From the NCBI RefSeq assembly GCF_052425735.1, contig NC_135763.1, forward strand, positions 35,278,001 to 35,342,000: a DNA stretch of 64,000 bases. Reading direction: 5' to 3'. The notes beneath the pieces are model-generated. The model made no database searches. It was not told the DNA's origin and saw only the letters and a program-made list of their open reading frames with translations. This stretch comes from Oculina patagonica. Taxonomy: Eukaryota. Positions 23,952 to 47,464 of this stretch are shown piece after piece; the first letter of the stretch is position 1, and the number at the start of each line of letters is the position of its first letter. The position numbers and the translations under genes are program-made.

Positions 23952-24749
23952 TCACCGCGTATAGCGAATTCTGTCCGGAGAAACTCGTTTTGTTCTTGAA
24001 TTTCTTCGTTGTTGTTTAGGCTCTCGAATACTCTTCGTCTCACTCAAACACTGCTCAAGTTTCATAAACCTTGGATCATCGAGACATTTTTGCGTTTTTT
24101 CTCGAGAAAGTTTTAGCATTTCTGGTACACTTGGCTGTTTTCGAAGCGGTGGCTTTCTCTTAGACAAAGCAGCGGGTTCTCGAAATGCTCCTTCGTTAGC
24201 GTGAATTGGCGGTAACTGATTCGGAGCTAAGTCTTCTAACTCAGGTGCTTGAGTGCCTGAAAGTTTTTTCCTGCTGCCGGCCACCGGGTTGGCGCTGGCT
24301 TCGTTTGATGGTCTATTTTGAACTGCTAATCGAACAAGCGTTATCGCCTTTTCCCAACGCCCCTTCGCCGCTTTGTTATGCCCTACGACTTCACCACCCA
24401 GGTTTGCGTGATTTGTCTCCAAGTTCGTAGCTACAATTGATCTTTTCCTTGCATCAATCGGCGGTAACTGCTCGCTACCTTGAGCATGTTTGCTTTCTCG
24501 ACGGTCAGGGAGCGTTCGCGGCCTTTCTTCGGACGCCGAAACTTGTTTCGTGGCAAATTCTAACTGTCTGTAAGTCATGTACTTATCCTGCCTGAATTGA
24601 TGTTTAGATAAAGTGTCTAAGCGCGTGTTGAGGGCCCGATCTTCGTAGGCATTCTCCTTGAGTATTGCGTTTCCAACCTTGTTCTTTAGCCGCATTTCGC
24701 CAGTCTTGCTGATTCTAATGAGCGGGTATCTTGACGAACTCACACTCAT
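23952..24749 (-). CDS. Cluster gene 6: coiled-coil + 2x LPPI + CaM-binding-like helix + DPRF motif
   Basis: 265-aa ATG ORF containing ENAYEDRALNTRLDTL, QLPPID, QLPPIH, KGRWEKAITLVRLAV and DDPRFMKL (DPRF at 24066-24077). Confidence 0.85.
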   Translation of the reverse strand: MSVSSSRYPLIRISKTGEMRLKNKVGNAILKENAYEDRALNTRLDTLSKHQFRQDKYMTYRQLEFATKQVSASEERPRTLPDRRESKHAQGSEQLPPIDARKRSIVATNLETNHANLGGEVVGHNKAAKGRWEKAITLVRLAVQNRPSNEASANPVAGSRKKLSGTQAPELEDLAPNQLPPIHANEGAFREPAALSKRKPPLRKQPSVPEMLKLSREKTQKCLDDPRFMKLEQCLSETKSIREPKQQRRNSRTKRVSPDRIRYTR

Positions 24750-25780
24750 CTTGAATCAATGGCCGCGACTTCTAGAGATGCCTCAAATCATGGGCAATAT
24801 TTTCCGTGCCCCGTATCAGTAATCCCAAGAAAAGACCGCGAACCTCTACGAAATCTTTGAATACCTTTTCGTATTAGCGGATGTGATGTGACAAGGTCCG
24901 GTTTTGTTGTTGCGAAACTGGATCCGTTTGCCCAGAGGCTCTTAGCATAAAAGTTCACTGTACCGCAGACTGTTGATCTTAACCACATTAAACTACTTCA
25001 AGGCGTTTTAAAAAATTTTACGTTTCCTCAGATAAGACAGATCTGATCGCGAATGTTTGATAAACACACCATCAAGAACAAAGCTCCAATAAAATACATC
25101 CCGGGTGATTTGTTTGCTTAAGACTTCGCTTTGCATATACCGTCATTGAATAATTTGAATTTCTAAAACGATATGCATTTTAGCAGGTCCCGGGAGACTA
25201 CAATGGAAAAGAATAAAGCGCATTAATGGATCTTTAGAACGCTTTCATCGCATTAGGAATGCGAAGAGTGCGAACAAAGCTTGAAATGATTGGGTTTTAA
25301 AAGTTTCCCGTAGTTTTCAAGACGTTTCACTTGTCAGGAAAAAATTATCTCGACACGACGTTTTTATTTGCTTATAACTAAGTGCGAATTTTTCATTAAC
25401 ACTTCCATTGTCACCATTATGAATTGTTTATTTAATTAGGATTTATCAGCGACAATATTCTCAACGGCGCAAACATTGTGCAGGATTTTAGGATTCCGTA
25501 TATCTTTACCAACATTAAAACCTTTCTTTTAACTGCCCGAGGCATAGCAGACCACATATGCGTGAAATTGGTGGCACGTGAGAAGATTTAATGAGGTGCA
25601 AGCTTGGTTCGCGTGGGCAAGCCTTCTCTTTGACTGAAGGGTGAACGAACTTTAGAACTTTATTGAGGTTTATTGACAAAAGGCAAGCTAGGACGTGCTA
25701 AAATTACACAGAAATAGACCCGTTTTCAGCCGTTTCGAGAGGTGACTTCACAAAATCATTGTCTGTTTCTGTCACGTTTA

Positions 25781-26344
25781 GGGCCTGTTTATATGGAGGA
25801 GAGTTGTCCCTGGTAGGAGGGTACCCTCCATACCGAGCCACCCCAGGCGAGAGAGTTTTCATACGTTTCTTTATAAAGAGCCAAACTGTTTATATGAGAA
25901 ATTGCAAAGTTGGCTCGGGGGGCAGGGTGACCCTGGGTGGAGGGTCACTCGCTTTGATGGTGGGGTGACCCTGGGGAGCGAGCCAACTTTTTCCATATAA
26001 ACAGTTTGGTATTTTTGCCTCGCCTACCAGGGACAAGTTGACACATACGGAGCATGCGCAAACGCTAAAATCAGCAAAAACAAAATTGCAAATAAATGAA
26101 ATCGAAGTCGGTGGTAAATTAGTCCAAAAAATGGTCTTGGTCGACGATTCAGCGTTCCTGATTTTAGAAAAAGCAGCCATAATAGATGTTTCAAAACAAC
26201 TCTTGCCAGTCTTTGAACCGAGAGGGCCAAGTTTTGGCTCGGTCAACAGGGACAACTTTTACATATAAACGCTCGTTAAAAGATGACTCGGGGGAGAGGG
26301 TAACCCTCCTACCAGGGACAGCTCTCTTCCATATAAACAGGCCC
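25781..26344. mobile_element. PIF/Harbinger-type MITE
   Basis: Long TIRs GGGCCTGTTTATATGGA.GAGAG.TGTCCCTGGTAGGAGGG at both ends; 3-bp TTA target duplication. Confidence 0.85.
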
Positions 26345-26422
26345 TTAGTCGCACTTGGGCGTTTAAAAAGAGAGATGGGGGTGGGGGCGCTCATGCTTAT
26401 AAATTGTAGTGTAAGTAAGTAA

Positions 26423-26831
26423 GGCCCGGTTCAGACGCCGATCTTATTCATGAACCGAACTTAATTCCTTGAATTAAGTACATGAAAAGATCGGCGTCTG
26501 AATCAAATTAGAACACTATTTCAATTTGGAACGGCTCACCCGTTCTTCCCGCCTGGCTTGGCCGAGAGTTTCGCCTGTGGAACGCCTTTGGAACGGCTTT
26601 GATTCGGACGCCGTACTTTTCATGTGCCGATCCTAATTCATAAATTATTATAATGTATTTTGACTGGTTTTATTGGAACTGTATTTGGAACGGCTTCGGA
26701 ACGGCCAATGAAAGTACGGCGTCTGAAGTCAAGAGGCGTACTTTTTTGTCATTTTGGGAGCCCTCGGTCACAAATCGGCGACACAATTGAGTTCGGAAAC
26801 TTCATGAAAAGTTCGGCGTCTGAACCGGGCC
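26423..26831. mobile_element. PIF/Harbinger-type MITE
   Basis: TIR GGCCCGGTTCAGACGCCGA / TCGGCGTCTGAACCGGGCC; TAA target duplication (26420-26422 and 26832-26834). Confidence 0.88.
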
Positions 26832-29800
26832 TAAGAATCTTTATTCAAGTACCAGCCCTTATATTACTGGGAACAATAAAAAAAATAGTCACAGTAAAAA
26901 AATATATCATAATCGGCCGCTTAAACTTTTAAATAATTCTTAAAATTTGCAAGAATAAAAGATTAAACGAATCGAAATACATACAATTAAAAATAAATAT
27001 ATTAATTGAAATCATGGCACGCTGGGTGTAAAATAGATAGCAAGAGGCACAATTGCTGTCAGCGTCCAGTTATGAGATTTTTCTGTAGTTTGATGCCCGA
27101 TGCACGGTTTATTTCTTTTGGAGCCCCAAGGAAAATTTCTGCTATATTTGGGCAAAGTAATGGCGCTCTGAAGCTTTTTTTCTCTGTTACTCAACCTTGT
27201 AATTCAATATATTTAACCTGCCCGCTTTAGTCCGCGTAATTCCGTAGCATTACGCGGACTTAACAGGTAGAGAGGTTTATGCCCTGCATCAATTTTGAAA
27301 AGCTTCTGCCTGCATATATATGTCAGTCATAATTAAAGGTGAGCCATTCTTTTGTTGTCAGTATGAATATTGGCCGTTTGACAACTGTCGGCAATAAAGG
27401 ATGTCCTTTAGCTATATAGCTAAAATTCCAGTCCAATTGTCAGTTATCTGGTACAACACATCTAAGAGCCTCTTTGCAATATCAAAACAAATGGGATTGT
27501 ATGGCAATATTATAAGTAAGTATCGGATGTCAGTGAAAATCTTGGCCTTTTGTTAACCAAAGAGGTGACTCAGTAGAATAAAGCAAGTCACAAACTACGG
27601 CGTCATCTTGATGTGCAGCTAAATTCTCCGAACTAACTTCAAAAGAAATGTGTGACAATAAGTTAGAGGAATTTACATTTCGATAACTGTAAATTGCGGC
27701 TAACCTGTATGTCGTATTTTCCACTTTCACAAATGTACTTTAAACCACCACGAAGATTAATACCCAATGACCAATGAGATATCTTGACACAATTTAACCA
27801 GACGCAGTAACACGATTTCTGGTAATATGATAACAAATACAGTAATTTGCATCTCTGTCCTAAAAATAATGAATCCATAACGTCATTTTCATCAATTTCA
27901 GAAGTCGCGACACTTTCGTGATTTGCTTCACAGATTAAACAAAGCGATAAACCGCGAAATCTCATTCCGGAAATTTGTGTTTTTAAGGAAAGGAGAGATT
28001 ACAAACTCACCACAAAACTAATCCACATTGATAATGAACAGTCCCTCCCTTTAATTTCACCCTTTTTCTTTTCTGTCTGTTCACGTCAGTCACAGGTAAA
28101 TGCCATATGGTTTCTTTCGTGATACCTGCTTCGTCAATTTAATATTTGCCTTCCAACCGAAAATGTAAATAATTATTTATTTGGTATACTGGTTGATTTT
28201 GTTTAACCTTTTAAACTGCATCAATATCAAGTAGCCGCAAAGAAGCAATTTTTGAAAATTAAACAAATCAATCCGGAAGTGGCGACTGAATCGCTCGTAA
28301 GAGAGGCTTTCGCTCGCCCTAGCTCCTTCATTGTCACGTTACGTGCGGAAAAAATTGGCAAGTTTTTTCAAGCTTGTCGTTCGTAATTCGTCTATCTTCG
28401 TCAGTTGAAACCATCCTTGTTTATTTTTGGGTTGTTATTACTCCTTTGGTGATTTTCCATGTTAGAAAGCTGTTATTTGAGGTTTCCTTCAATTTATAAC
28501 TAATCAGAAAAATGACTGTGTAATTGCTCCTTTAAATATAGACGCTCGGATAACTCAGTGTTTCGATTTCCAGACCCTGGATGACTATCTAAGTTATTCC
28601 GCTAAGCTATATCACTCTTTCACTCACCAAAACTGTTGATTTTCCGCTTCGACCGAACTGGCTTCTACCAAATTAATTTGGTCTTTGTCAAATCATTTAA
28701 ATGAAATCTCTCTGCGCCGAGTAATCTTTCGCTGATGATCATTTTGTACAGACAGGAGTAGAGATTATAGAAGATAATCAACAAAGCGATATTGTCCTGA
28801 TGTACCAGATTTTAACATGAAAACAAACAAAGTATGGCCGCTGGTATTTAACCTGCGGTCAGGAAAGAACGCCTGATCGCATGTTAGCTGGTATTGAGTC
28901 ATGCGATCTCAGTTTCTCGTAAACAAAGGAAATTGCATACGTATTTTATACGGGAAGTAAATAAGCGCACGGTGTTTACAAATACAAAGTAGTAATATAC
29001 TACACCATATTTGCATGAGAAATGCGCACCATTATTAACTGAGCAAGCAGCTATTCACTTTGCAGACTTTGCCGCGCAACTATCCAATAACAGGACAATA
29101 AAAGACAATGCTGTGTAAGCCATCGAACAAAAGGCATACAATCGGTGTTTGAATGTCTTTTCGGCATTTACTTATTGTCAATGTTTTTTTTCTTGCGATG
29201 AAGACGCTCGACAACATCTCGTCTCTCATCAGTGAAGTGCTAAATGCTAAGCTTGTTACCCTTGTGGGCAACTTGTCACCCCGATATCAACACCGTGATT
29301 AATTTCACTGTGATATTTGCGCCAGCGGTATTTAAGGTCGCCAGTCATTAGCCTGGGAGTCTGTACGCATTGTTGAGCACTGTCGGTGCATCTCTTCAAA
29401 GGTTACAGAGGTTTTGGACGAAACAACACGGAAAAATTCGGTCGAGTCACGGACTGTTGATGTGAGTTTCGAACCAGAGACGACAAAACAGCGCTCGCAG
29501 GTGAACGCTGTTAGAAGGGGGTAGAAGAAGCCAGCCTAGGAGGACATTGTTGCACATTTAATGACCATTCTGCGTGACAAATCAGTTTCTCTGAATATAG
29601 TCTGCAATTTAGCAGCCCATCGTTATTGTACTCGAAGGCGAAAAGCGTGGGTTTGGAATAGAAACAAAACAAGAGTGTCAACACTTGAAACGAAGTACTA
29701 CAAGCACGGAACGGAGGAAATGGAGGAAACATTGTCGGAGAGGTGCACACAGTTGTTTTCAGCGATTAAAATACTTTGGATTATCCTGGATCACAATCAT

Positions 29801-29815
29801 GTTGCTTTAGGCAAC
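29801..29815. promoter_or_regulatory. RFX X-box-like site GTTGCTTTAGGCAAC immediately upstream of gene 7
   Basis: Palindromic GTTGC..GCAAC ending 34 nt before ATG 29849. Confidence 0.35.
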
Positions 29816-29848
29816 GTTTTGTTTAATTACTAAAAGACCCTAAAAGTC

Positions 29849-30763
29849 ATGGATTTTGAAGGCGCAAGACGGAACGCGGACGAGAGACTCAATCAAGAGC
29901 TTATTAGAATCCGCAATCTTCCGAAACGAAGCAAGATCAAAATAGTCAACAAGTACGGCTTGAAACATGCGAGTCACACCAACGCAGGATTGCTGAAGGA
30001 ATTAGAGATCAACCTGGGTGTCATTTCTCGAGAAAAGAAGAGGGTGGCCAACGAATGTGATAAAAGACAGAGAGACTTTACTGAAATTCAAAGGAAATCT
30101 CTGTCGAAATTTCTACCTCCTTTAGCACAGGAAGAAGAAGAAGTCGAAAAACAAACGATTAAGAGAAAACCGCAAAGACAGCAAAGAAGCACTGCTGTTT
30201 TGGATCAAACACCAATGTGGTTGAAAGGTCGAAGGGAGTCAATAAGTGAAAAGAAAAGAGAAATTCTTTTAGACTTGACTGCAAAGAGCAAGGAGAGAAC
30301 GTTTAAAATTATTTCTAAGAACAACAAAAAGACCTCTATTGGGGTGCCGTTGCCGCCTATTCGTGATTCTGAACTCGAGGAGGATGCATGGATAACTCGA
30401 CTAAATCATCCGCGGAAAAACGCATTTGCTGGGAGTTGCTTCCCGTTTTTGCTAGCAGAAGAAAACGAAAATGAAAGAGACCAAGAGAAATATCACGGGA
30501 AAAGACTGCATCAGAATCAACAATGGCCACATCCTCCGCCAAACAAAGACAGTGCAAATTTGAAAGCAAGAACGTTTCGAGGCACTGTCTACGAAAAGGT
30601 TCTTAAAATGCCAGATCCCGCTAAAATCCCTCACCTAAATCCTAGAGACCCTAAACTTTATCAAGTTGTCATGAAAGTTCGGAAACGAAAGGTTTCCAAA
30701 TTAGAAAATTCGGATGCAGTCGTTGCACGAAAGAATACCGTGTTCACAAGACACTGGAAATGA
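29849..30763 (+). CDS. Cluster gene 7: coiled-coil + LPPL/LPPI disordered basic protein
   Basis: 304-aa ATG ORF containing TNAGLLKELEINLGVI...RQRDF, FLPPL, PLPPIRDSELEE, RRES and RDPKL. Confidence 0.85.
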   Translation: MDFEGARRNADERLNQELIRIRNLPKRSKIKIVNKYGLKHASHTNAGLLKELEINLGVISREKKRVANECDKRQRDFTEIQRKSLSKFLPPLAQEEEEVEKQTIKRKPQRQQRSTAVLDQTPMWLKGRRESISEKKREILLDLTAKSKERTFKIISKNNKKTSIGVPLPPIRDSELEEDAWITRLNHPRKNAFAGSCFPFLLAEENENERDQEKYHGKRLHQNQQWPHPPPNKDSANLKARTFRGTVYEKVLKMPDPAKIPHLNPRDPKLYQVVMKVRKRKVSKLENSDAVVARKNTVFTRHWK

Positions 30764-33257
30764 TTATAAGAAAAATTTCCTCCGGGAAAAAGAAACAGGC
30801 ATAATTTAATCCTGGGTGAAATAACTCAAAGTTAGTTCTTCCTGTTATTCCGTTACTAGAGTAAACGCGGCTGTAAAATCAATTATTCAAGAATTTTAAT
30901 GTTGCGTTTGTGTCTGGGAGGAAGTCGTTCATCGGATATATTTGAACAGTGAATGACGCCAGAGTGTTGCGAAAGAAATACATCTCTGGCTTCGCAGATT
31001 TTGCTGAATTTTGCACCAAATAGAGTTTTAAATTCAAATCGTTTAGGGGTATCAAATGGTCTTTGCGGCTTTGGTGCGGCGTTTTTTTTTTGCGGCACGG
31101 CATTGACAAAATTTTCCTTGCGGCACGGCATTGACAAAAATTCCTTCGCCCCCCTTTTAAAAAACCTTTTTCCAAAAAACCGCCGCCTTAAGGGGGGGCA
31201 AAAAAAACCACACAAATTTCCCAAAAAAATTTTTTCCCCCTTTCGGCAACCCCCCCACGTTTATGGTCAAATCTGTAAGTAAATCCAAAAATCGAAAAAT
31301 GCGTGCTACTTCAACATTATTCTGTGAAAGCAGAAGCAGACGATATCACTTTTACTATTTCTTTTTAGTAACATACGGAAAATCAATGAGGAAATATGGC
31401 TATTGTTAGAGGTTTTCTCGGAATAAATTGAACCGATCAAATGCCCACTTTCGAGCACTTTGTCCAAAAGATTAATTGTAATTGGCCATTCATTGTGCCA
31501 ATGTAGCTTGAATCTTATCTATAAACTGTAATATGTACGAGAAATTGTCTGGATTAACTGATATCGCCTGTGTTCTTTATCTTGTTGGAAGAAATGAAAA
31601 TACCGGTGAATATTATAACAGTTGTTGAAATTGTTAAGTATGACCTATAATGCAACATGTGACGGTTTTCGCATCGGTGTCAAATTCAGTTTTAATACCT
31701 TCATCTTTCATCTTCTTTTGACCTCCTTTACACGCTGCTTTAACAATGGCAAATTCTGTGAGCCTTTGTTATTTAAACGCACCAATAATTCACAGAATCA
31801 CCCCTAAATAAAAAAGCGCCTTTAATATTATTTTGGATGTATGAACTAAAGCAGAAACCGCCTGGGAAACCGACAAAGTGAAATGCGGGCCGGGTAGGCC
31901 AGATTACCGACTGGCGTTCATCTTTAACAACGTCCAATCAATTTATGTAAGCAAAATACATGAGAAACATGTTATAAATGATAATAGGAAGTTAACTTAC
32001 CTGCGTTTCTTTGTATTTTTGAGGCCGTATTTTAGTTATTTACACATGTGTAGCTAAATGTTTGCCTAGAACTGCTGTACGGGCAGTATGAATGAAAGCC
32101 ACTTAAATAGTATCTCGTGTTTCATCTGTAACCATCATTAATTAATTTATTAAAAGTACAAGTTATTAATATTAATCGTTAAAGATGAAACACGAAAATT
32201 TATCCTTCAACTTGCAGACTCCCAAGTCAAAATATAAAATTGTTTTCCGTCAATAATGAATCAAATAAAACTGAAATTACATTTTGGGTACATGGTTGCA
32301 TAAAGTTTGCGCGCTTCAGTCGCTTGAGGTACGTAAAATAACGACGGGCAACCCATGGAAGTTCGACCAGTGTATTTGAAATGGAAATCAATCCAAAAAA
32401 ACTCCCAGCAAACAGGTATTTATCTTTTTTTATTTCTTTCTATGCTTTTACCTGTTTACTTTATTATTTTTTTTTTGTTTGTTTGATATTATTTTACGAG
32501 GAGTCAAAATTTGCTCTTACAATTTGCTACAATACAGTGTCAGGGTTCTCAAGCGTCTTTCTTTGAGGTGAAAGAAATGCCAAAAATGTGCTCTAGATCG
32601 AATAAGAGAACTGCATTTTCCCTGATGTATTAAAATAGTTTTTAGGTAGTCCACAGCAGCGACTGTTTCAAATGGTTCTCAAATCTATCAGAGTTACTTT
32701 CATCCCTATAAATAGGATCGAAGTGTAAATAATATAAACGGGTTCGGGACCGGAAGGTATCGATTTTTTTGGATTGAAATAGCCGAGTCAGAGAGCACGT
32801 CAAATTAAGTTGATCAGTCGTGCACCAAGTGGTGGCGACTATGTATAACAGAAAGGTCATCAGTCAGGCATGTAGATACCGGAACGTGCACTCTTTCAGC
32901 CACTCCAATAGCCCCCTAAAGGTAAATACGAATCAACAGAGTACATGGAATAAACTCTTTGTCGGTGCGCTGTCTGCTAGAAAAGAGTCTGGCGGAAACA
33001 AGCAAAGAAATACTAGTAAACTGTATTCGGAATAATTTCCACAATTTCAGGAGTGATTCTAGTTGCAGTTACAGAGGTGCAATTTTGCCAAGCGAGAGTT
33101 GGAGTGCCCTAGACTTGCCTATAAGTCGAGCTCACAGAGCGCGAAGCGCGGGGTCTACTACCACCAAACCGGAAACGAGAAGCAAACGACTTTGAGAAAG
33201 TCTAGGACTGCCCATGATTGCGAGTCCCCAACTTGAATGAAAGATTCCTTGTACCGG

Positions 33258-33824
33258 CTATCGTGCACTCCGAAGTTGCATAATTGTGTATCGCGAGTGA
33301 AGCTGTGCAGGTTTTGAGATATCTAGAACGGCTGTAGTCCCCGAACGTGTATCATTGCCATTCAATATCTCAGGCTGCTTAGACTGCTTAAGATCACGTT
33401 CCAAGCCTCTAGAGAAAGCTTGAAACTTTCTCTCTTCTTGAGTTCTAAAACTCCCATACGTCGCCTTATTAAACACAGGCGCGGCTACATCGGCACCCTT
33501 ATTTCCCAGTATATAAGGAAGGTATTGACTTGGCGTAGTTCGTCGTTCCATGGGAGTCGCACTTTTATTTTTGATGCTGTTTCCATCGTGAATTGTCTTT
33601 GTTTGAATTATGTCGACAGAGTTAACTCTCGTCAATCGCAGAACCTCCCGTGATGCCAGCCTTTCGGGTTCGCGCAAACTTGGGTTGATTATTTTGTCTG
33701 CATTTACCGCCTGTGCGTTTATGACCTTTATCCTGTCATTGTAGCAAAGTCTATAAGGTGTTCTTTTCTCGTTATTATCAAAATCAACAGCACATTCTTG
33801 GTCAAACTTTAAACTTGAATCCAT
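33258..33824 (-). CDS. Cluster gene 8: disordered protein with LPYI motif
   Basis: ORF 33258..33854, first in-frame ATG at 33824; YLPYI and RRTT. An out-of-frame upstream ATG near 33870 makes the start uncertain. Confidence 0.6.
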   Translation of the reverse strand: MDSSLKFDQECAVDFDNNEKRTPYRLCYNDRIKVINAQAVNADKIINPSLREPERLASREVLRLTRVNSVDIIQTKTIHDGNSIKNKSATPMERRTTPSQYLPYILGNKGADVAAPVFNKATYGSFRTQEERKFQAFSRGLERDLKQSKQPEILNGNDTRSGTTAVLDISKPAQLHSRYTIMQLRSAR

Positions 33825-35977
33825 GGTCCGAGTGATATTTTCTTCGTCGTTCAAAATTTTGATCGTTCATTAATATAAAGCAATGCCTTGGCGAATTAAA
33901 CGAGACACCTATTCAGTGTTATTCTAATTAACCGAACTGATTTTTTTTATTGAGTGCACTTGATTGGTCGGCTAGGGACAATTGACAGTTAAGTCATAGC
34001 CGCAAGCTTTAATTGGCTTTTAAGAGTACGTAATGGCAAAGGTCTTGGGTTAGTCTACATGCAAATTGAACATTTTTTGCAACATATTTCTACTGCTATT
34101 TTAAATTGCCTCGGATTGAGAGAAAAATTGTTGTCTTTAATTTATGATCATGCAGGGATAGTTTAATTAATTACTCCAGCGAGAGCAAGAGTGAAGTTAA
34201 TAAACTTAACTGCTGTTAAAGAATTAATGTATCAGGAGATTAGTCTCCAAAGAAACTATTATCCTGCGCCGGCAGGCAAAAGAAAACATTTAGTTTATTA
34301 TCGATCAACTATATGAAATTGTAATCACCACCGTCTGAAATTCACAGGTGAATTTTTGACATGTAGCTTTTGGAAGATTGTTCACCGTATGAAGGGAGCT
34401 TCTTTTTTAATCGAAAACTACACAAGATGATTACCTTTAGTAATCAACTAAACTTCATACACTTGAGAGATTACATTCGTTACGATGTTAGTATAACAGT
34501 AGTCTTCTGAAAATCGACCTACTCGGACTTTGTGCGAAAAACCCAGCCGTGTTAACTTTAACAAGTTTATCACTGCTATGAAGGGAGTTTTAATTTTCTG
34601 CTAGTATCGTTGCTTATTTTTAGATTAACACTTAGCTTTAGTACTCTTGTTTTTTTATCTTCACCGAGACGTAAAGAGAATAAAAGATTTGATGACACTT
34701 TGAAAAGGAGTAATCCAGATTTTACCATATACATTGATACCAAGCAAACGACCGCCACTCAATAAATGCATCGTTCTGTGAATATAAGAAGGGAAGGGAT
34801 ATGGTAATAACGTTAACCGTGGACACTGAACACAGGAGCTTTAGAGGTTAATTAAGTTATAACTCTATGCCTCTCTTTTACAGATCACAAACAAATAAAT
34901 GAACTTTTGTTTAGAGCCTTTATTGTTTGGCCACTTGATAAGTATGGACCCAAGGGAGCAGAACTGAGGTAGGAATTAACAATGTTTTGGCTTTGCTGAG
35001 AGATATGCAAACACCAAAGCTTCACCGGGTCGGTGCAGGCAAACTCTATTGTACACTATTATCTTCTTGCAAAAGAAATCAGGCATAGTTTTATTCCAAA
35101 AACTAACCTTTATCTAACCTGCCCAGATATAGGGACAACGTTCAATTTTGTTGTTTTATGATATTATTAATTGGAAGCTTAGAGAAAATCCGTTTTCAAT
35201 CATTCAACCACTTAACTAGCACAGTAAGTTTTAGGAGAATTTGCCTAGAGAAAGTACAACTAAACGCAATGTTTTCAGGGTTTTATTTCTATATTACACT
35301 ATTACAATTGATCAAGCACCTAGTGAGACTATCCTGTTGCCAGTCTATTTAAATAAAGGCCCAGCTGGTTTAAAAGATAATTGTGCTAGATTCACTCAGT
35401 TGTTACTCTCCCGTGCATATCGGTGACACTGGAACCAAAACGAATAACTTGAAGCCCCGGTCTTGAAGAATTAAAAGTTCACACTGTATCATATACTCTA
35501 TTAAACTCAATCATTTCTGTCAGCTGCCACTACTCCGCTATACTAACACGGACAGGTTTACTTTATCCTCGTGGAAGACGTAAAACTTAATTATACGTGG
35601 CGTAGAAAGGACGGAGAAGAGAGGTAAACGAACGCGAAGCGCAGAAAATGATAGCGCGTTTTGCGTGGATCATTTTCCTCCTTTTCTCACGGCCTTTCGG
35701 CACCAGCCACGTGCCCATTGACAGTTCAATTGGTGTACGCGTTAATAAGAGTCGAGGTTGATAAAGTTTTATACGGCCACTTTACCTTGTTGAAACTGAG
35801 TAGCCTTTATACTGCCTAAAATTCGCAGAAACACACTGAGTGTGTTTCTGTGAATCTTAGGAAAAAAAAGAAAAACTAACCAGACTTTGAGCTGGCAGTT
35901 CTATGATTCACATCTAAAATAACAACCTTTGGCTTAATTAACTGTACATGAACGTAGGTTAAAACATTTACATATAG

Positions 35978-36481
35978 TTATAGTCTCTGATTAACAACGT
36001 TAAGGTTTGTCAACTTTGGCAGTTTTAATCTCACAGATTGTGACTCTGTCTCTCTTCTAGGTTCACTGCGTTCACTGTTCGTAAATCCATTCTCTTCGCC
36101 TTCCAGATTATCGTTTCTGAGCGCTAAAGAACATCCGTAATGGTGAGAAGTTGCTTTGTTCTCTTCGCCAGAACGACCATTGTTGGTACGAATTTCGTCT
36201 GATAACAATTCACTACCTCCAGTATTGTACATTGCTCTATGTGCTTCTGGATTCGTAATGCAAGGAAGTTCGTAAATTGGCGGGAATAGAAGTTTGTTGG
36301 TTGCGTTATTTGGGCGTTTGTTGGCAGCTATGTCTTCATTCCGTTCGCTAAATGGAGCAATATCTCTCCAAGTACACATTTGTCTTTGTCGATTCTTCTG
36401 TAAGCGCTCCAATTTTTTCGGCTCGATTTTACCATAAGAGATGCAATGGCAAAATTTCTCACTTCTCTTCTTGTTTCTCAT
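35978..36481 (-). CDS. Cluster gene 9: disordered protein with FPPIYELPCI and LKLPKL motifs
   Basis: ORF 35978..36490, ATG at 36481; three [LF]Px[IL] motifs. Confidence 0.6.
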   Translation of the reverse strand: MRNKKRSEKFCHCISYGKIEPKKLERLQKNRQRQMCTWRDIAPFSERNEDIAANKRPNNATNKLLFPPIYELPCITNPEAHRAMYNTGGSELLSDEIRTNNGRSGEENKATSHHYGCSLALRNDNLEGEENGFTNSERSEPRRETESQSVRLKLPKLTNLNVVNQRL

Positions 36482-38186
36482 CGTTTTCAACCTGATAATA
36501 TTAAATTGTCAATAAATCTTAGCTTGGTCTCTGCGTTTTCGCTTAGTGTTTTTACTTATTATGCAACCATGCGGTCGAAGGATGTCTTTTTGCTTTGCGG
36601 AATCAACTCTCTGAATAAGAGACAGTAATGTTCACTGTTTCTCTTTCTACGTTAAACTGAGCACTGTGACGCTGTCAAATTGATAAGCAGTTTTGTCTAT
36701 GGTTCTTGTAACAAACGCTTCCCTTTTTCGACGAGATTTGGTCAGCTGGTTAATCCTTTCGCTGCAGTCATCCAAAAATGCGAGTAACTAAAACTTGCGT
36801 TTTAAGGCTTCATAATATGTCTGAGACCAAAGTAAACGGATTGAATGATGAGTGAACTATTACACGTTTGGTAGCCAGTGCCTCAGATTCTTCGATCGAC
36901 TTCACTACTTCATGATTTTCATGTACATTCGTGCCACAGATGACGATATATGGATCAGCAGGTCGGTGCCAATTTAAAGTGGAATAGTGGTTTGTTTGTG
37001 CGCAATTGTTTGTACATTCATATACACCAGATAAAAGAGTGGAGGCCTCATTTGTCCAAACTGCGTCAGTAGAATTAAAACTAATCCCGCGTGATCATCA
37101 ATTCTCGCTGATGTCTTTGTTTCACTCGTAACCAAGAAAACATACCTGACCGAATCACATTAAATTTTAATTTTGCGTTAAATCTGCAAAGCGGAAGACA
37201 TTAAACGAAACACAATGATAATGAACCAAATACATCACGGAAGTATAAACTACAGATTTCTAAAGACGGATATCGTCCAGACTGACATTGGCTCCAGCTT
37301 AAGTTAAATCGATGAATTGTTGGTTATGAAATTTGTCATAACTTATTATAAAATTTGTCATAACTTGGAAGGCAATTTTCAATATATATGGATAGAAATT
37401 ATGTTTTTTTCTTCAAAGAGAACTTTGCCGCCGACATATGCATAGATAAGTTGAATTGGCATATTTTCAACGTATACGTCAAGGGAAAATTAAATAATTA
37501 TTCCGCTTTTCAGCTAGCCTGCGAGAGCATCCGACTTTTTATTGCTTTTGTCCGAAAAAAACAGGATGGTCTCACAGGCTACTTTTCAGCACGATGTCAT
37601 CATGATTCAAAATAAAAATATTTTTTTAGGGTTTTAAAAACTTTAAATCTTAATTGCTTTTGATTTTTGTTTCTAAACAACGACAAAGTTCTTAGCAGGC
37701 ATTTATCTGAAAGCAAATGAAACCAATGTCAGGTTTAAACTAATCTTAATTTCAAATTTGGATACAATTCTGCCGAAAAATAGTTTAAACAATGAACTGG
37801 AAAATTATTGGTTAAAAATTGCAAGAGCAAGACAAACGAAATACCGCAAAGCAAATGTTCAGGAGATTCTAGAAAAAAATGTCAGGTAAATGGAAAAAAA
37901 TAATAACAGTAACAATCAAGACAAGAACTTCAAATGACATAATTCATTAGAAAACTTTTATGACCAGAGGAAGAAAAAATTGATACCAGATTATTGCCTT
38001 GACCTGAGTGGGTTTTTCTCTTTCGTGAAAATGATGGTTTCTCATTTGATGACGCCAGAAGCTTTCTGTAATCATGGAAACCGGTTTTTGTAAATCAAAG
38101 TTGACAATGAACGTTCGCCACGCGTAACTACTTATAAGCGTCAATTTTCAAGGAATTAACGGGAAAAAGGTTTTGTAAAGGCGTTC

Positions 38187-38791
38187 ATGGAGAATAAATC
38201 GTCAAGGAAATTGCCGGATAAACATGGCGGAAGGCACGAATTCGAAAGTGAGAATTATCACAGCGAAAACAAAACTACTACTGTTGATAATAACCACAAG
38301 AGCGATCAAACAAGCTCCCAGCATACGTCTGGCCGCGCAATCTCAAATTTTCGACACTTAGTTAATGTTTATCACACCATTGAGAAGAATGGTTTCACAG
38401 TTGATAGTAAACCATCCCAAGATGCTCCAGACAATTCTGACACGGAATGCGAGTCTAATGATGAAACACAAGATCACAAGAGACGAGTTGTGTTAAAGGG
38501 AGCCGATTCAAGCGAAAGGGACTCTTGTGTTCTCAGCGAATCTGTCAACGTCGTTCGTATTTTTATGAAAGGAATCCATTACTCGATCCGAGATTTACCC
38601 GCCTTATCGAGCAACTTGTTCCTGTGAGGAATGGGATACAAGTAGACAAGAAGAAGTTTTCCTCTGTAAGGAAAGAAAACGTTTCTGATAATAGCGACGG
38701 AATATGCTTCAAAGACCTCTGCCTTAACGAAACTTGTCGGTTAGTGTTTAAAATCATGAATAAGGGGAATGATGATCATCCCAAGAAATGA
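38187..38791 (+). pseudogene. Cluster gene 10: DPRF-family member split by a frameshift (pseudogene or assembly error)
   Basis: Frame 1 (38187..38627) has SNFRHLVN. The family motif LDPRFTRLIEQLVP (38582-38623) is in a different frame, open from 38465 to the stop at 38791. Confidence 0.7.
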
Positions 38792-38895
38792 AATGTGCAT
38801 GCGACAAAATTATTAATTTTAGTGAAATGTTTAAGCTTGCTATATGTTAATCAAGTTCATAATGCACGCGGGAAACAAGGAGAGCACGAGAGATA

Positions 38896-39315
38896 CCCTG
38901 GAGGGAAGTACTCCCATAAATTTTGGATAGGGGTGGGTCGCGAAGGTTCTTAAACCCTGACCCTATTTAAGGATAAAGAAAAGAAAAATTGATACCCTTT
39001 TTAAGGCCCAAAACCGAAAAATGACACCTTATTCAAGGGGAGGAGAAGCGTTCCATGACGACCCAAATAACGGCTAACCGCGCACGACAAAACACAAATC
39101 TTTATAAAATTGCTTTACTAATACTCGTACGGATAGTTCAGTGTTAAGATACCTGTTTTTTCGTTCGGGGCGTTTATTTTAGCTGATAGAATTTAGGTAC
39201 CCTATCTAAGGATCACACCGGGAGCACAACGCCAAATGGAGCAAAAACCATACCCTATCCCGGCCAGACGCACATACCTATATAGCCCATATATGGGAGT
39301 ACCCCCTCCCCCGGG
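38896..39315. mobile_element. MITE with CCC.GG..GTACTCCCATA termini
   Basis: CCCTGGAGGGAAGTACTCCCATA at left; TATGGGAGTACCCCCTCCCCCGGG at right (imperfect TIR). Confidence 0.6.
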
Positions 39316-40261
39316 GGAATCAGTCTCGAACTGATTGCCATGAAAGTGAAAATTTAAAGTTTCTGTGTTTCTAATTTAACGAAATAGTCCGCAAAATTAG
39401 CACACGTTAGTCACCAACACTGAGCCGTTAGACGAACGAACGAAGTTGCAGAAGAGACCAAGGTTGTTTATCATTTACAAAAACAAAAACAAAAACAAAA
39501 AATTCTGGAAATTTCTGCTCGGAATTTCCGTTCGGTCCTCTTTAAAGATTCCCCGGAGAACCCGCCTTTTTTGTTGAGGCACAAAACTTAACATGGCCGT
39601 TAATAGCAGTTTACGAATTTCCATTTGGAACGTCCCAACTAGGAAAACAGAATACCTGTTCTCGATAATTTAAAAAAGCTGAGTACATTGATTTTTATTC
39701 ACTAGCCCTTTATTCGTTAGTTATTGTTTAATCAGAAATTGCATCACTTGTAACATATTGTATAACTATAAGGTTCAGTTGCAAGAGATCTTTGAGTTTT
39801 TCAAAGATCCCACACATTACTAATAAAAAAATTACAATAAATGGGCGCTTTTTCAAGTTACATTTGCCATCCTTAATATTACAGTCTTGTGCACATCTAT
39901 GTAAATGATGCTGTATTTGCTGTATATTTATCTTAAGCAAGTTTTTATGCCTATAATAAAATGTTTTATTTGTTAGATTTTCTGATAGATTGTTTCTTAT
40001 TTGTGCTCCTCTGTATCTTTCCTGCAATTTTAGCGCCAGGATACTGGCGATGCAAAGTTTTTGCTTAAAATCGGGGACTCGGTGACTCTAGATAAACGCT
40101 AGATTGCAATTCGACCGAAACGTATTAACAGACTAATTCCGCTGAGTGAGGTAAATAAATGATCACGGAATTTCTAATGAGCCATTAACCGAGGTGGGAA
40201 TATGACGTAATCTTCAAGAGCCAATTGATATGTATGTATTAACACATTTCGACTGTTTTGT

Positions 40262-40480
40262 GGGAGCCCTGGTAGCCTAATGCTTAGTTGGTTGGACTTC
40301 GTATATTGAGAGTTGGTTGTTCGAGCCTTACTAGGGCCCGAGTCACCCGAGTGTTGTGTTCTCACAGTACTCTATCTACCGAGAGGTATAAATAGGCACC
40401 GACGAAATGACAGTGCCGGCAACCTGACAGAATGCTGCGTGTCGACGTCTGTGATAGAGCAACATCCCATCCGGAGGGAG
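40262..40480 (+). mobile_element. Degenerate tRNA-derived SINE remnant
   Basis: GGTAGCCTAATG..GTTCGAGCC boxes followed by a GTGTTGTGTTCT..GGTATAAATAGGCACC core-like segment. Confidence 0.45.
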
Positions 40481-40589
40481 TAACTTGAGTTTGGCCGCGA
40501 CAACTTCATACTACTTGAGTTAAGCGTCCACGTTTTGAGCTACCATGTTCCGTAAAAGAATGCAGACACGGTATTTTTAACATGCATGT

Positions 40590-41291
40590 TTAGCAATCAA
40601 TAGGTGCCATAGGTGTCAGTGAGCGTAACAGGCTTTGAAATCTTGGGTCAAGTTTTGCATCCAATGATGAAAGTTGACTCTTTACTTCGACAGCCTTTGA
40701 TATTGTACTGGGCCGTACATTGGAATGATTGGATCTTCCTCTTGCAGGAATCGAGTCCGCACCTCTACGGCTCATTACGCTAGCTACTCCATTTGAGGAC
40801 TCCTTCAGTTTGAATTCTTTTACCGTTTGGTGAGTTTCTAAGTTTTTCATCCAAATGAAACTCTCAGACTTCTTTTCTCTCGTGTTAAAGAGTTTAAGCT
40901 TTCCAATGCTTAATACTTTTCTCGTCGGTTCGTTTTTCCAATAACTTATGCTAACGGGACTCATTCTCTCTAAGTATTCTAAATATCGTAACTTTTCTCT
41001 GTGAAACTTCCAGCCATTCAGCTTCCTTTCTTCAGCTCCGTCCTTCTTGAGTTTAGCAAGACCCTTTACTTTCTCTAATCGTTCCTCCTTCGTTAGATTT
41101 TTGTCAGCACAATCCTTACGCTGTTCACTTATCTCATACATTAATGGACGATTCCTCGCTATTTGCACGAACCTCAGAACTTTGAGAAGTTTGTTCACAA
41201 CATGTTGAAACGATTTTCTTCTCTTTGGTTTCGGCCAAACAGGCGAAACATGCACAACAGATTTAGAATTTGAACTTAATAACTCTGCCAT
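40590..41291 (-). CDS. Cluster gene 11: HVxPxWP / CaM-binding-like helix / DPRF family
   Basis: ORF 40590..41336, ATG at 41291; HVSPVWP-KRRKSFQHVVNKLLKVLRFVQ; LDPRFQSLLRSLTP (DPRF at 40638-40649). Confidence 0.85.
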   Translation of the reverse strand: MAELLSSNSKSVVHVSPVWPKPKRRKSFQHVVNKLLKVLRFVQIARNRPLMYEISEQRKDCADKNLTKEERLEKVKGLAKLKKDGAEERKLNGWKFHREKLRYLEYLERMSPVSISYWKNEPTRKVLSIGKLKLFNTREKKSESFIWMKNLETHQTVKEFKLKESSNGVASVMSRRGADSIPARGRSNHSNVRPSTISKAVEVKSQLSSLDAKLDPRFQSLLRSLTPMAPIDC

Positions 41292-42291
41292 ATTAAAAGC
41301 TTTTTCGTACACGGCGAGGTCGAGTAATGAAAACACGACTACTTATCACGAAGGCCCTTTTATTTACCAGATGTACGTGTATTGGACTGACATCATAAAT
41401 TTGGCTTAATCCTTTGTAGCATTATGTTTTGGTAATCCTCATTAAATATGCTGTTGTCTTCTAATGTTTTAACGCTCATTTAAATAAAAAATATTGGTGA
41501 CGCAAATGAAGTAAGCACGTAATATGATTTAGACATTTATGAGTCAAACTGGCAAACAATTTCGCACGACTTTATCAGTATATATTGCATCTTATCAAAG
41601 ACCTTTGGTAATAAGGCTTACCTCTTGCGTTTGTTTGATCTTAAAACATCAAAGTTAGTTTCAATATCCACAAATGAAGGGTCTAATTGTAAAGACCAAA
41701 ACAGGTCATATGAGGAGCACATGCTCATATTTCACCGGAATTACTAGACTTTTGCGGAATGCAGATAACTAATAGCCCTTGTATAAGGCTTTTACAGAAG
41801 ACTAAAAACTCAGTTAAGTTAGTATGATAGGAATACAAAACATTTTGTATTTTGGATTGTAAATTCAGCACTGTACTCGCCTCTTCCAAAAGTAAATGTA
41901 CCTTTGCATAACAATCTCGTGTAAGTCCAAAGAGAATAATAGGTCAGGTGACTTAAACTGGTTCCCAGGGCCTTCGAGTCTCTTATTCGTCCCAGAGGCT
42001 GTTTGGTGTGGGGACCAGGGGTAGGGGTGGAATGAAAAGGGGCCTAAGGGAGCTGCGGTCATAAGTTTAGCTGTTTATAATCGATCTATGCCAATTTTGG
42101 AATACGTCACAATTTGAATTTTTAAATGAAAATACTCTTTTATTATATCACGTACAGCACGTTTTTGTAATAAAATTGCGTCAAACAAAGTTATAACTAT
42201 GTCAGCAATTACACAGTTCATTTTGGCATTTTTGACAGGTGTTTTAGTAACCACGGCTAAGCTTAGCAACAATCTTTCTTTGGTTCACTTG

Positions 42292-43176
42292 TTAAATGTA
42301 AAAGGTAGTTGGAACATTTTTCTCGTTGTACTTTGGCTCCATGGTTTCCAGCCATTTCTCATGCAAACTCTTCCCACTTAATCTGCTTTGTAAAGTTCTT
42401 TCTCTCCCTTTAGTCGAACTAATGTTTCGACCCGTACCTATGTTTCTGAATTCTGTTTCACTTCTGTTTGACGGGGGTACAAGAGATGTCAGCAATCGTT
42501 CGAAGCGAGGGTCATTAACTGGCCGTTTAGCTTCTTTGTCGTTTCTGTATATTTGTGGCAAATAAATCGCATCATTTCTTTGTGGAAAACCAACCTCGTC
42601 CTCATTACTTCGTCTGGGCGTATGAGCCTTGCTAAGGTTTCTATGTTGATCTTTCGTTGATGTACTATCCTCAATTTTCAAAGTATCTCGGAGTTTCTCG
42701 GTGGTCATTTGCAAGTCTCTTATGAGCGTTTGGCTTGCGAAATTGTTTGAATTTCCCTTGGTGACGACCATGCTCGTTCTAGGTAGTTTTTGCCATTCTC
42801 GTAACTTGCACCAAGCGTTTTTCTTTCTTTCTTCCCTGAGAAAGGCCTCCATTTGAATCTCGTAAATGCGCTGATGTTTTTTCCTTTGTTCCTCGTGAAA
42901 ATTTCTGGTGAGAGTTACGATATTGTCTTCATCGTCCACCTTCTCGGCCACTTCCGACACGAAATCTTTGAAAGTCGGATTTATACTTTGTAGAAATTTA
43001 AAAAGGATCATTTTATTTCGCACGAGCCGCCGGAAATTTGCTCGTCTCGCTTTCACATTTTCAATTCTCTTCTCTGGAGGCCAAATCGGAGTAACATGTG
43101 GAATTAAAGGGAAAATGACTTCTTCTGTGCTGTTCAAGTTCATTGCAATTATTTCCCTTCTTGATTGCACCGCCAT
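42292..43176 (-). CDS. Cluster gene 12: tandem paralog of gene 11
   Basis: ORF 42292..43197, ATG at 43176; HVTPIWP, RRANFRRLVRNKMILFKFLQ, YLPQIY, NDPRFERLLTSLVP (DPRF at 42502-42513). Confidence 0.85.
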   Translation of the reverse strand: MAVQSRREIIAMNLNSTEEVIFPLIPHVTPIWPPEKRIENVKARRANFRRLVRNKMILFKFLQSINPTFKDFVSEVAEKVDDEDNIVTLTRNFHEEQRKKHQRIYEIQMEAFLREERKKNAWCKLREWQKLPRTSMVVTKGNSNNFASQTLIRDLQMTTEKLRDTLKIEDSTSTKDQHRNLSKAHTPRRSNEDEVGFPQRNDAIYLPQIYRNDKEAKRPVNDPRFERLLTSLVPPSNRSETEFRNIGTGRNISSTKGRERTLQSRLSGKSLHEKWLETMEPKYNEKNVPTTFYI

Positions 43177-46615: not shown

Positions 46616-47464
46616 ATGGGCAAGAAAAAAACAAAGGGACATCGAAAGGCATCTCGCAGTGACAAGCGAATGCAAAAACTTTACAACGATGCGATAAAAG
46701 AAGTAAAGAAAAGAAATATTAACTTGGACGACTTGCCGGCTAAAAACGCTGACGATGTCGATGAAGCCAGCGAGGAACGTGAGGAGGACGAGCACCTTGA
46801 CACACAGAAGACGAGAAAAAAGCCAAAACAAGTCCTCAAAGAAACACTGACGAAACAAGAACAGTTAAGAAAGCCTAGAGTTTCACTTTCTGTACCGGTG
46901 TCAAAGCTCGTTCCTTTCAAACCAGATGAAAAAGGATTAGAATTTCCTAGAGACTTCCGCCGAGACCCAACATCTCTATCGTGGATTCCGCGTAATTCGC
47001 CGGGATTCCCGCTGTTTGCACCTGAACAATACAATGCAAGACGATCACCCAGTTCTGAATATGGTGATGAATTTGAGAAAACTATTTCTTGCAATGATCT
47101 CCCTGCACAAAGCAATGATCTAAGCGTCGACGAAATTTTGCAGGTGTTGCCTCTTCGTATTGGGGACGAAGACAGTGAGTGCCTGCCAGAGGCGAGCACC
47201 CGCTCATCACAGCTCCCGCCAATTTACCGTCAAGATTTATGGCAGGAAACTATGCGCCGAGCGTCAACGTCTTCGCGCTCAATTCCCGCCAAACAGGACG
47301 CGTGGAGCATTCGTGATCCAGCGTCATTGATGGTTGGGAGACAAGAGCTTTATTCAAGAGAAAAATTCAGGTCAACCATCAGTCTCGCTGAGAGACGATT
47401 CCGCTTGAGAGCTGCAAGCTCCAGCGCCGTGTTGCCTTCAAGGGACGAATGTTTTAACCTATAA
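46616..47464 (+). CDS. Cluster gene 13: disordered protein with LPPI motif and RRxS sites
   Basis: 282-aa ATG ORF; basic N-terminus, acidic patch, QLPPIYR, RRAS, RKAS. Confidence 0.8.
   Translation: MGKKKTKGHRKASRSDKRMQKLYNDAIKEVKKRNINLDDLPAKNADDVDEASEEREEDEHLDTQKTRKKPKQVLKETLTKQEQLRKPRVSLSVPVSKLVPFKPDEKGLEFPRDFRRDPTSLSWIPRNSPGFPLFAPEQYNARRSPSSEYGDEFEKTISCNDLPAQSNDLSVDEILQVLPLRIGDEDSECLPEASTRSSQLPPIYRQDLWQETMRRASTSSRSIPAKQDAWSIRDPASLMVGRQELYSREKFRSTISLAERRFRLRAASSSAVLPSRDECFNL

What the first reader, a model, noticed from the sequence alone, without database searches (positions are those of the whole stretch)
24066..42513. Unassigned C-terminal motif DPRFxxLxxxL(V/T)P shared by four genes
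Seen: LDDPRFMKLEQCLSE (gene 6), LLDPRFTRLIEQLVP (gene 10), KLDPRFQSLLRSLTP (gene 11) and VNDPRFERLLTSLVP (gene 12); a weaker RDPKLYQV in gene 7. The pattern is an N-capped amphipathic helix (F, L+3, L+7) in the C-terminal part. I cannot assign it to a known linear motif. Four matches in otherwise divergent proteins imply selection for a common binding partner (inference).
Basis: seen in the sequence. Interest (0 to 1): 0.7.

Follow-up and report, generated by a model that had tools for sequence, protein, structure and literature searches.

The report
DPRF helix of coral orphan proteins
The shared DPRFxxLxxxL block is real: it marks an undescribed family of small, mostly disordered proteins in corals and sea anemones, it is kept almost unchanged while the rest of each protein drifts, and what it binds, if anything, is still unknown.

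Summary
Observation confirmed. Four exact DPRFxxLxxxL blocks lie at the stated places. None appeared in 200 simulated windows, and 4 of the genome's 81 strict pattern matches fall within 18 kb.

The block is nearly invariant in orthologues: about 30 stony corals for gene 12, and corals, sea anemones and more distant unnamed relatives for gene 6. All six Arg and all six Leu codons are used at the fixed positions, so selection acts on the protein. AlphaFold2 puts it in a short helix that starts at Asp-Pro, inside otherwise disordered chains. Pfam, PDB, the ESM Atlas and the literature give no match.

The four proteins are not independent. Genes 11 and 12 are paralogues. The same genome holds four more carriers elsewhere. 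One of them (pC) joins a gene-6-type N-terminus to a gene-12-type "LVP" ending. So the sharing is probably inherited within a fast-evolving single-exon family, not convergent.

A common binding partner is plausible but untested. Gene 7's DPKLY block is conserved but is not recognised by the motif profile. In this assembly gene 10 carries a 2-bp frameshift just upstream of its motif.

Moderately interesting: a new family signature of unknown function.

The parts
23952..24749 (-). Gene 6: complete single-exon ORF of 265 aa, the most conserved DPRF-family member. It has an N-terminal hairpin plus a long helix, two invariant LPP(I) sites and a basic GRWEKA helix. The DPRF block is at residue 225.
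   Evidence: ORF. There are 47 homologues, reaching Nematostella at 47% identity. Alignments are. dN/dS is 0.07. AF2 model.
24039..24077 (-). Gene 6 motif DPRFMKLEQCLSE. D, R, F, L+6 and L+10 are invariant in 23 homologues.
   Evidence: AF2 helix 226-241 has pLDDT 72-78.
38187..38627 (+). Gene 10, N-terminal reading frame. In this assembly it ends prematurely because of 2 extra letters near 38550.
   Evidence: Three runs lack 2 letters at 38550. The DNA alignment with intact orthologues is. dN/dS of this part is 0.69.
38525..38791 (+). Gene 10, C-terminal reading frame. It carries the motif and an invariant Cys-rich tail (ICFKD.CLNETCRLV.KIMN).
   Evidence: dN/dS of this part is 0.09.
38585..38623 (+). 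Gene 10 motif DPRFTRLIEQLVP.
   Evidence: Orthologues have DPRFTRLIEQLVP (L001), DPRFTRLLERLVP (L003) and DARFQQLVMRLVP (L002).
40590..41336 (-). Gene 11: ORF of 248 aa and a younger paralogue of gene 12. It is absent from the most divergent coral locus, L002.
   Evidence: BLASTP against gene 12 gives 25% identity over 232 aa, E 6e-6. Orthologues are present in L001 and L003 but not L002. dN/dS is 0.39-0.47.
40611..40649 (-). Gene 11 motif DPRFQSLLRSLTP.
42292..43197 (-). Gene 12: ORF of 301 aa. It has an HVTPIWP block, a basic helix and a long helix, with the DPRF block at residue 229.
   Evidence: 30 coral orthologues. Alignment A1. dN/dS is 0.20-0.24. AF2 model.
42475..42513 (-). Gene 12 motif DPRFERLLTSLVP. 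D, P, R, F, L, L and P are at least 90% conserved in the alignment.
   Evidence: AF2 gives an isolated helix at 230-239.
30647..30679 (+). Gene 7 (ORF 29849-30763) block DPKLYQVVMKV. It has the same acid-Pro-basic-hydrophobic start and the same i, i+3, i+7 spacing, and it is conserved. It is not recognised by the DPRF profile, so its relationship is unresolved.
   Evidence: L002 has DPKFYHVVMKV and Nematostella has EPRLRKVVLMA. The motif HMM gave no hit and the family profiles gave E above 0.1.

Best explanation
The DPRFxxLxxxL block is the signature of an undescribed, fast-evolving family of single-exon genes in corals and sea anemones. The encoded proteins are small, basic and mostly disordered.

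The block forms a short amphipathic helix of two to three turns. Asp acts as the N-cap and Pro is the first helix residue. Phe, Leu+3 and Leu+7 lie on one face. In about half the members the helix is closed by (V/I/T)-Pro.

The four window genes share the block because they descend from a common ancestor through tandem and dispersed duplication. At least four more carriers exist in the same genome, two of them 3 Mb away on the same chromosome. Everything else in these proteins has diverged, while the helix has stayed under strong purifying selection.

The most likely role of such an isolated, conserved helix in a disordered chain is docking onto a folded partner that the family members share. 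The partner is unknown.

Shown: the motif is real, it is conserved, selection acts at the protein level, a helix is predicted, there is partial homology among carriers, and there is no existing annotation. Inferred: a single origin for all subfamilies, and a docking function.
For: Reality and non-randomness.

Conservation:
- Gene 12 family: D229, P230, R231, F232, L235, L239 and P241 are at least 90% conserved.
- Gene 6 family, including Nematostella and six distant relatives at 26-33% identity: D, R, F, L and L are invariant.
- A 27-sequence motif alignment across all subfamilies has D, R, F, L, L invariant and P at least 90% conserved.

Protein-level selection: all six Arg codons and all six Leu codons occur at the fixed positions. 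dN/dS is 0.07-0.47, and the motif-bearing part of gene 10 has 0.09 against 0.69 for its N-terminal part.

Structure: the AF2 models are largely disordered (pTM 0.24 and 0.19). Helices start at residues 226 (gene 6) and 230 (gene 12), immediately after the Asp.

Family relationship:
- Genes 11 and 12 are paralogues.
- hhalign of the gene 12 profile against the gene 6 profile aligns only the 34-column motif region.
- Four further carriers, pA to pD, sit in ORFs of 178-338 aa.
- With the motif removed, the gene 6 profile still finds pC (E 5e-8) and the gene 12 profile finds pB (E 4e-4).
- With the motif present, both profiles find all carriers and none of the ten non-carrier genes in the window.

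No annotation: Pfam, PDB, Atlas and papers.
Against: Outside the motif, gene 10 shows no detectable similarity to any other carrier, and the gene 6 and gene 12 families align only over 34 columns (hhalign probability 10%). A single origin for all subfamilies is therefore not demonstrated.

No binding partner was identified or tested. The helix could instead serve folding or self-association. pLDDT for the gene 12 helix is only 55-63.

I obtained no RNA evidence. The three runs that hold the stretch are contigs of unknown library type and are probably DNA. That the genes are real rests on conserved intact ORFs, dN/dS below 1, and RefSeq or GenBank gene models in Montipora, Nematostella, Pocillopora and Desmophyllum.
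Confidence: 0.6

Rival explanations
1. Convergent short linear motif. Unrelated proteins independently acquired DPRFxxLxxxL because each needs to bind the same partner.
For: Outside the motif region, most carrier pairs have no significant similarity. Gene 10 in particular has none.
Against: The shared block is long and specific: five invariant positions over 11 residues, plus a frequent L(V/I/T)P ending. Six of the eight carriers lie within 3 Mb of one chromosome and four within 18 kb. Genes 11 and 12, gene 6 and pC, and gene 12 and pB are demonstrably homologous beyond the motif. pC combines the gene-6-type N-terminus with the gene-12-type ending. Tandem duplication followed by fast divergence of disordered sequence explains all of this more simply.
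Confidence: 0.12
2. The helix is structural or self-associating rather than a docking site for another protein. It might pack against the preceding helix, or mediate oligomerisation of the family members.
For: In gene 6 the block follows directly on another conserved helix (208-224), giving a helix-kink-helix. The proteins also contain long helices that could form coiled coils.
Against: The upstream helix is conserved only in the gene 6 family. In gene 12 the DPRF helix is isolated between disordered segments. pTM values of 0.19-0.24 give no sign of a compact fold. I could not inspect contacts in the models.
Confidence: 0.15
3. The block is an ATG8/LC3-interacting region (LIR): an acidic residue, then F-x-x-L.
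Against: That expression is very permissive. LIR cores bind as extended strands and usually sit among acidic residues. Here Pro and a basic Arg directly before the Phe are invariant, Leu+7 is invariant, and the segment is predicted helical. None of these features is explained by a LIR.
Confidence: 0.04
4. Chance matches or non-coding sequence.
For: Genome-wide, the degenerate DNA pattern is no more frequent than its control. Most matches elsewhere lie in short open stretches.
Against: There were 0 matches in 200 simulations against 4 observed. The matches are clustered within 18 kb. They lie in complete ORFs that are conserved across species with dN/dS below 1.
Confidence: 0.01

Closest known systems
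Short helical docking motifs of disordered proteins (MoRF-type linear motifs), for example the paxillin LD motif LDxLLxxL and the ESCRT-III MIM1 motif (D/E)xxLxxRLxxL(K/R). Both consensus strings are recalled from memory.
   Same: An acidic helix-capping residue is followed by a two- to three-turn amphipathic helix with three hydrophobic positions on one face. The helix lies in a disordered, C-terminal region and is conserved while its flanks drift.
   Different: The spacing and the fixed residues differ: here Phe, Leu+3 and Leu+7, with invariant Pro-Arg before the Phe. None of 27 motif sequences matches either consensus. No MIT or FAT-type partner is implied.
Nuclear-receptor box and related FxxLL / LxxLL helices (recalled from memory)
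   Same: Some members read FxxLL (genes 11 and 12, pC, pD).
   Different: Only 8 of 27 sequences have FxxLL and 1 of 27 has LxxLL. The gene 6 family has Glu or Gln at that position, so it is not a family-wide feature.
Ku80 core helix PRFQRLFQCLL (PDB 1jeq and others)
   Same: It is the best match of the motif profile among all PDB chain sequences.
   Different: E is 0.5, which is not significant. The Asp is missing, and the segment belongs to a folded domain of an unrelated DNA-repair protein. I treat it as chance.
Other orphan single-exon coral families with a conserved short motif, such as the PKI-like RRNA(I/V)C family reported by this scan elsewhere in the same genome (note s1-310655, unchecked)
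   Same: Both are small, conserved but unnamed cnidarian proteins, encoded by clustered single-exon genes, whose only strongly conserved part is a short block.
   Different: The motif and the genes are different. There the motif resembles a known inhibitor site. The DPRF block has no known counterpart.

Membership tests
Any Pfam-A domain or family | Score above the gathering threshold for a curated profile | tested here: not met
   Ten window proteins gave no hit below E 0.1. All 17 members of the gene 6 alignment gave only scattered single-member hits at E of 0.009 or worse.
DPRF family (defined here) | D-[P]-R-F-x-x-L-x-x-x-L in the C-terminal third of a complete ORF of about 180-340 aa | tested here: met
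   Met by genes 6, 10, 11 and 12 and by pA, pB, pC and pD, and by 27 of 27 representative sequences. In gene 10 the ORF is interrupted in this assembly.
DPRF family (defined here) | Detectable homology outside the motif among all carriers | tested here: inconclusive
   Significant for genes 11 and 12, gene 6 and pC (E 5e-8) and gene 12 and pB (E 4e-4). Not significant for gene 10, or between the gene 6 and gene 12 families.
DPRF family (defined here) | Gene 7's DPKLY block is the same motif | tested here: inconclusive
   The spacing is the same, and the block is conserved in L002 and Nematostella. The motif HMM and the family profiles do not detect it.
ESCRT-III MIM1 | (D/E)xxLxxRLxxL(K/R) at the extreme C-terminus | tested here: not met
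   0 of 27 sequences match. The motif lies 17-72 residues from the C-terminus.
Paxillin-type LD motif | LDxLLxxL | tested here: not met
   0 of 27 sequences match.
Calcineurin docking motifs | LxVP or PxIxIT | tested here: not met
   L.VP matches 1 of 27 and PxIxI(T/S) 0 of 27. The frequent ending is L-V-P without the spacer residue.
PP1 RVxF docking | [RK]-x(0,1)-[VI]-{P}-[FW] | tested here: not met
   0 of 27 motif segments match. The RVxF-like strings seen in the window are in genes 1-3, not in the DPRF genes.
ATG8-interacting region (LIR) | Acidic residue, then [WFY]xx[LIV], bound as an extended strand | tested here: inconclusive
   The generic regular expression matches 24 of 27 sequences. 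The segment is predicted helical, with invariant Pro-Arg and Leu+7. Binding cannot be tested with these tools.

The most novel reading that the evidence does not exclude
DPRFxxLxxxL is a previously unrecognised class of helical docking motif. Through it, a whole battery of disordered cnidarian adaptor proteins would plug into one conserved hub protein, for example a phosphatase, an EF-hand protein or a trafficking module. The genes are partly clustered on one chromosome, next to other motif-bearing orphan genes in a block of microsynteny that is conserved between coral and sea anemone. That block would then be a co-evolving signalling gene neighbourhood.
Probability: 0.2. Interest if true: 0.65.

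Novelty: new variant of a known kind. Interest (0 to 1): 0.4.

Why it matters
Cnidarian genomes are full of unnamed single-exon genes. This work turns a handful of them into a defined family with a sharp, testable signature: five invariant residues kept from stony corals to sea anemones and beyond.

A short synthetic peptide, with F/L mutants as controls, is enough to look for the partner. Nematostella has a clear orthologue (A7RU42 / LOC5516978) and offers a genetic model. If a partner is found, the motif could be added to linear-motif catalogues, and it would annotate at least eight genes per coral genome.

If no partner exists, the family is still a clean example of how disordered paralogues decay down to a single conserved helix.

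Tried and rejected
- Pfam scans of ten window proteins and of 17 gene 6 homologues found nothing.
- ESM Atlas feature searches with gene 12, gene 6 and the gene 12 motif segment gave best scores of 0.75-0.82 to unnamed clusters, which is the range shuffled sequences reach.
- PDB sequence searches: the gene 6 profile gave no hit. The motif profile gave only a non-significant Ku80 match.
- Exhaustive HMMER search with the gene 6 profile over 1.84 billion representatives gave only 14 hits, all family members. There was no link to a named family.
- A word-indexed search restricted to the motif region of P0026 produced only 4 candidates, all close orthologues. That tool cannot reach motif-only relatives.
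- Protein searches of the window's own genome with genes 6 and 12 found only the query genes. The paralogues were found through a degenerate DNA pattern instead. That pattern misses members with variant motifs such as DARF or DSRF.
- 31 further pattern matches were inspected and rejected as short open stretches or unrelated genes, for example an ANF-receptor-like ORF in L013.
- Literature: 'DPRF motif', 'DPRF' and the Nematostella accession numbers returned nothing relevant.
- Expression: the only runs holding the stretch are low-coverage contigs of unknown type, so no statement on transcription is possible.
- Complex prediction was not used, because I had no specific partner to claim.
Full report
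**1. What is in the sequence**

The window is eukaryotic DNA of about 39% GC with sparse, complete ORFs. Earlier notes of this scan call it a stony-coral genome. The protein matches to Desmophyllum, Pocillopora, Montipora and Nematostella agree with that.

They sit in these ORFs:
- gene 6: 23952-24749(-), 265 aa
- gene 10: 38525-38791(+), C-terminal piece
- gene 11: 40590-41336(-), 248 aa
- gene 12: 42292-43197(-), 301 aa
- gene 7: 29849-30763(+), 304 aa

**2. More than chance**

In 200 Markov simulations of the window, DPRFxxLxxxL never occurred, against 4 observed.

In the whole 529-Mb assembly, the back-translated pattern is no commoner than its reversed control: 122 against 121, of which 81 have true Arg codons. 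So the genome is not enriched in the motif. Yet four of the 81 lie within 18.4 kb. My own Poisson estimate gives about 0.003 expected per such stretch.

**3. Conservation**

*Gene 12.* It has 30 orthologues in stony corals, down to 39% identity. In the alignment D229, P230, R231, F232, L235, L239 and P241 are at least 90% conserved, while the surrounding 60 residues are poorly conserved.

*Gene 6.* It has 47 homologues, reaching the sea anemone Nematostella at 47% identity. An exhaustive HMMER search of 1.84 billion representatives added six more distant relatives of unknown taxon, at 26-33% identity, and nothing else. Across all 23 aligned sequences D, R, F, L+6 and L+10 are invariant.

*Genes 10 and 11.* Syntenic loci from three other corals (L001-L003) keep the block in both genes. 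The exceptions are that the most divergent coral has DARF in gene 10 and lacks gene 11 altogether.

*Level of selection.* At the invariant positions, all six Arg codons, all six Leu codons and both Asp and Phe codons occur. Selection is therefore on the peptide, not on a DNA or RNA element.

Pairwise dN/dS values (dS is partly saturated):

| Gene | dN/dS |
|---|---|
| gene 6 | 0.07 |
| gene 12 | 0.20-0.24 |
| gene 11 | 0.39-0.47 |
| gene 10, whole | 0.41 |
| gene 10, motif-bearing C part | 0.09 |
| gene 10, N part | 0.69 |

**4. Structure**

AlphaFold2 was run with the family alignments.

- Gene 6 has mean pLDDT 64 and pTM 0.24. The model has a small hairpin and a long helix (23-74), a basic helix (125-144), and a helix-kink-helix (208-224 and 226-241). 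The second of these helices starts right after D225, with pLDDT 72-78. The rest is disordered.
- Gene 12 has pLDDT 54 and pTM 0.19. The model has two long N-terminal helices and an isolated 10-residue helix at 230-239, which is exactly PRFERLLTSL.

In 14 of 27 representative sequences the helix is ended by (V/I/T)-Pro.

**5. Are the carriers independent?**

They are not.

- Genes 11 and 12 align end to end: 25% identity, E 6e-6, with the motif at the same place.
- I inspected pattern matches elsewhere in the genome and found four further carriers in complete ORFs:
  - pA: C6 at 32.35 Mb, 330 aa, DPRFQKLISCLVP
  - pB: C6 at 32.37 Mb, 178 aa
  - pC: C3 at 29.53 Mb, 193 aa, DPRFRKLLQNLVP, with a haplotig copy
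  - pD: C11 at 7.79 Mb, 338 aa, DPRFTNLLDTLTP
- The other 31 inspected matches are noise.
- Six of the eight carriers lie within 3 Mb of chromosome C6.

Profile searches give this picture. With the motif present, the gene 6 and gene 12 family profiles each detect all carriers and none of the ten non-carrier genes of the window. With the motif cut off, the gene 6 profile still finds pC (E 5e-8, N-terminal region) and the gene 12 profile finds pB (E 4e-4, long-helix region).

pC thus combines a gene-6-type N-terminus with a gene-12-type LVP ending. In contrast, hhalign of the two family profiles aligns only a 34-column segment around the motif (E 0.003, probability 10%), and gene 10 has no detectable similarity to anything outside the motif.

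My reading is one old gene family whose disordered parts have diverged beyond recognition, about 65-70% likely. Convergent acquisition is possible but less economical.

**6. Known motifs and domains**

- Pfam gives nothing.
- PDB sequence searches give nothing significant. The best motif match is a Ku80 core helix at E 0.5.
- Atlas look-alikes are unnamed and score in the noise range.
- No paper in the library mentions the motif or the Nematostella accessions.
FxxLL matches 8 of 27.
- A generic LIR expression matches 24 of 27. It is very permissive, and it does not explain the invariant Pro, Arg and Leu+7 or the predicted helix.

So the block is not part of an annotated domain. As far as these tools and my memory reach, it is not a catalogued linear motif.

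**7. Gene 7**

DPKLYQVVMKV has the same acid-Pro-basic-hydrophobic start and the same i, i+3, i+7 hydrophobic spacing. It is conserved as DPKFYHVVMKV in a distant coral and EPRLRKVVLMA in Nematostella. Neither the motif HMM nor the family profiles recognise it. It may be a distant cousin of the motif or an unrelated capped helix. I leave it open.

**8. Gene 10 in this assembly**

The N-terminal frame (38187-38627) and the motif-bearing frame (38525-38791) are offset. Contigs from three runs, one of them nearly identical to the window, all lack 2 letters at 38550. Frame arithmetic shows that their absence joins the two frames. Orthologues are intact. This is either a consensus error or a very recent frameshift allele.

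**9. Mechanism and verdict**

The best-supported explanation is a family-inherited, strongly constrained, short capped amphipathic helix in disordered proteins. Its most likely function is as a docking element for a shared but unknown partner.

The structural reading is supported. The inference of a common partner is plausible but rests on conservation rather than on four independent occurrences.

No RNA evidence could be obtained. Gene reality rests on conserved intact ORFs, dN/dS below 1, and existing gene models in four species.

The finding is a genuinely undescribed family signature of moderate interest. It becomes more interesting only if a partner is found.

Noticed in passing
window 12921-33854; L050:1-20807: Microsynteny is conserved between coral and sea anemone. 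A 20-kb Nematostella locus holds homologues of window genes 3 (ankyrin repeats plus an RVxF-like TVTF string), 4, 5, 6, 7 and 8 side by side. All are unannotated proteins. A gene 5 homologue also sits next to the most distant gene 6 relative (L026).
   Followed up: partly
window 38540-38556: Gene 10 is frameshifted in this assembly. Contigs of three public runs lack 2 letters at about 38550, and orthologues in three corals are intact.
   Followed up: yes
window 6265-6297 (-): The motif HMM gives a 24-bit hit, DSRFVDLVKIQ, in a 51-codon open stretch with no ORF around it. It may be a decayed family member or a chance match.
   Followed up: partly
window 517-528, 24204-24215, 24456-24467, 30350-30361, 36275-36286, 42550-42561, 47213-47224: There is a second recurring short string, LP(P/Q/K)I, often followed by Tyr, in genes 1, 6 (twice, and there L-P-P is invariant across the family), 7, 9, 12 and 13. 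It also occurs in the extra-window carriers pA to pD as LPKI, LPLI or LPPI. I did not test whether it is enriched over chance.
   Followed up: partly
window 42997-43098 (-) and 41166-41258 (-): Genes 11 and 12 share an invariant H-V-x-P-x-W-P block followed by a basic amphipathic helix (RRxxF(R/Q)(R/H)hV). Gene 6 has a comparable GRWEKAITLVR helix (AF2 helix 125-144), and gene 10 orthologues have RTFRRVIV. These look like calmodulin-binding-type helices, but nothing was tested.
   Followed up: partly
window 38680-38780 (+): The gene 10 tail ICFKD(I/L)CLNETCRLV(F/Y)KIMN, with three Cys, is almost invariant in four corals. It is a second conserved block of unknown role.
   Followed up: no
window 38885-39415: This is a repeated element. 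Contig depth is about 600-3000 in all three runs, against under 40 for the flanks, with many loose ends and joints.
   Followed up: no
window 52-927, 4447-5715, 12921-14102: Genes 1-3 carry RVxF-like strings (KVRF, RVRF, TVTF), each followed by a hydrophobic pair. None of the DPRF genes has such a string.
   Followed up: no
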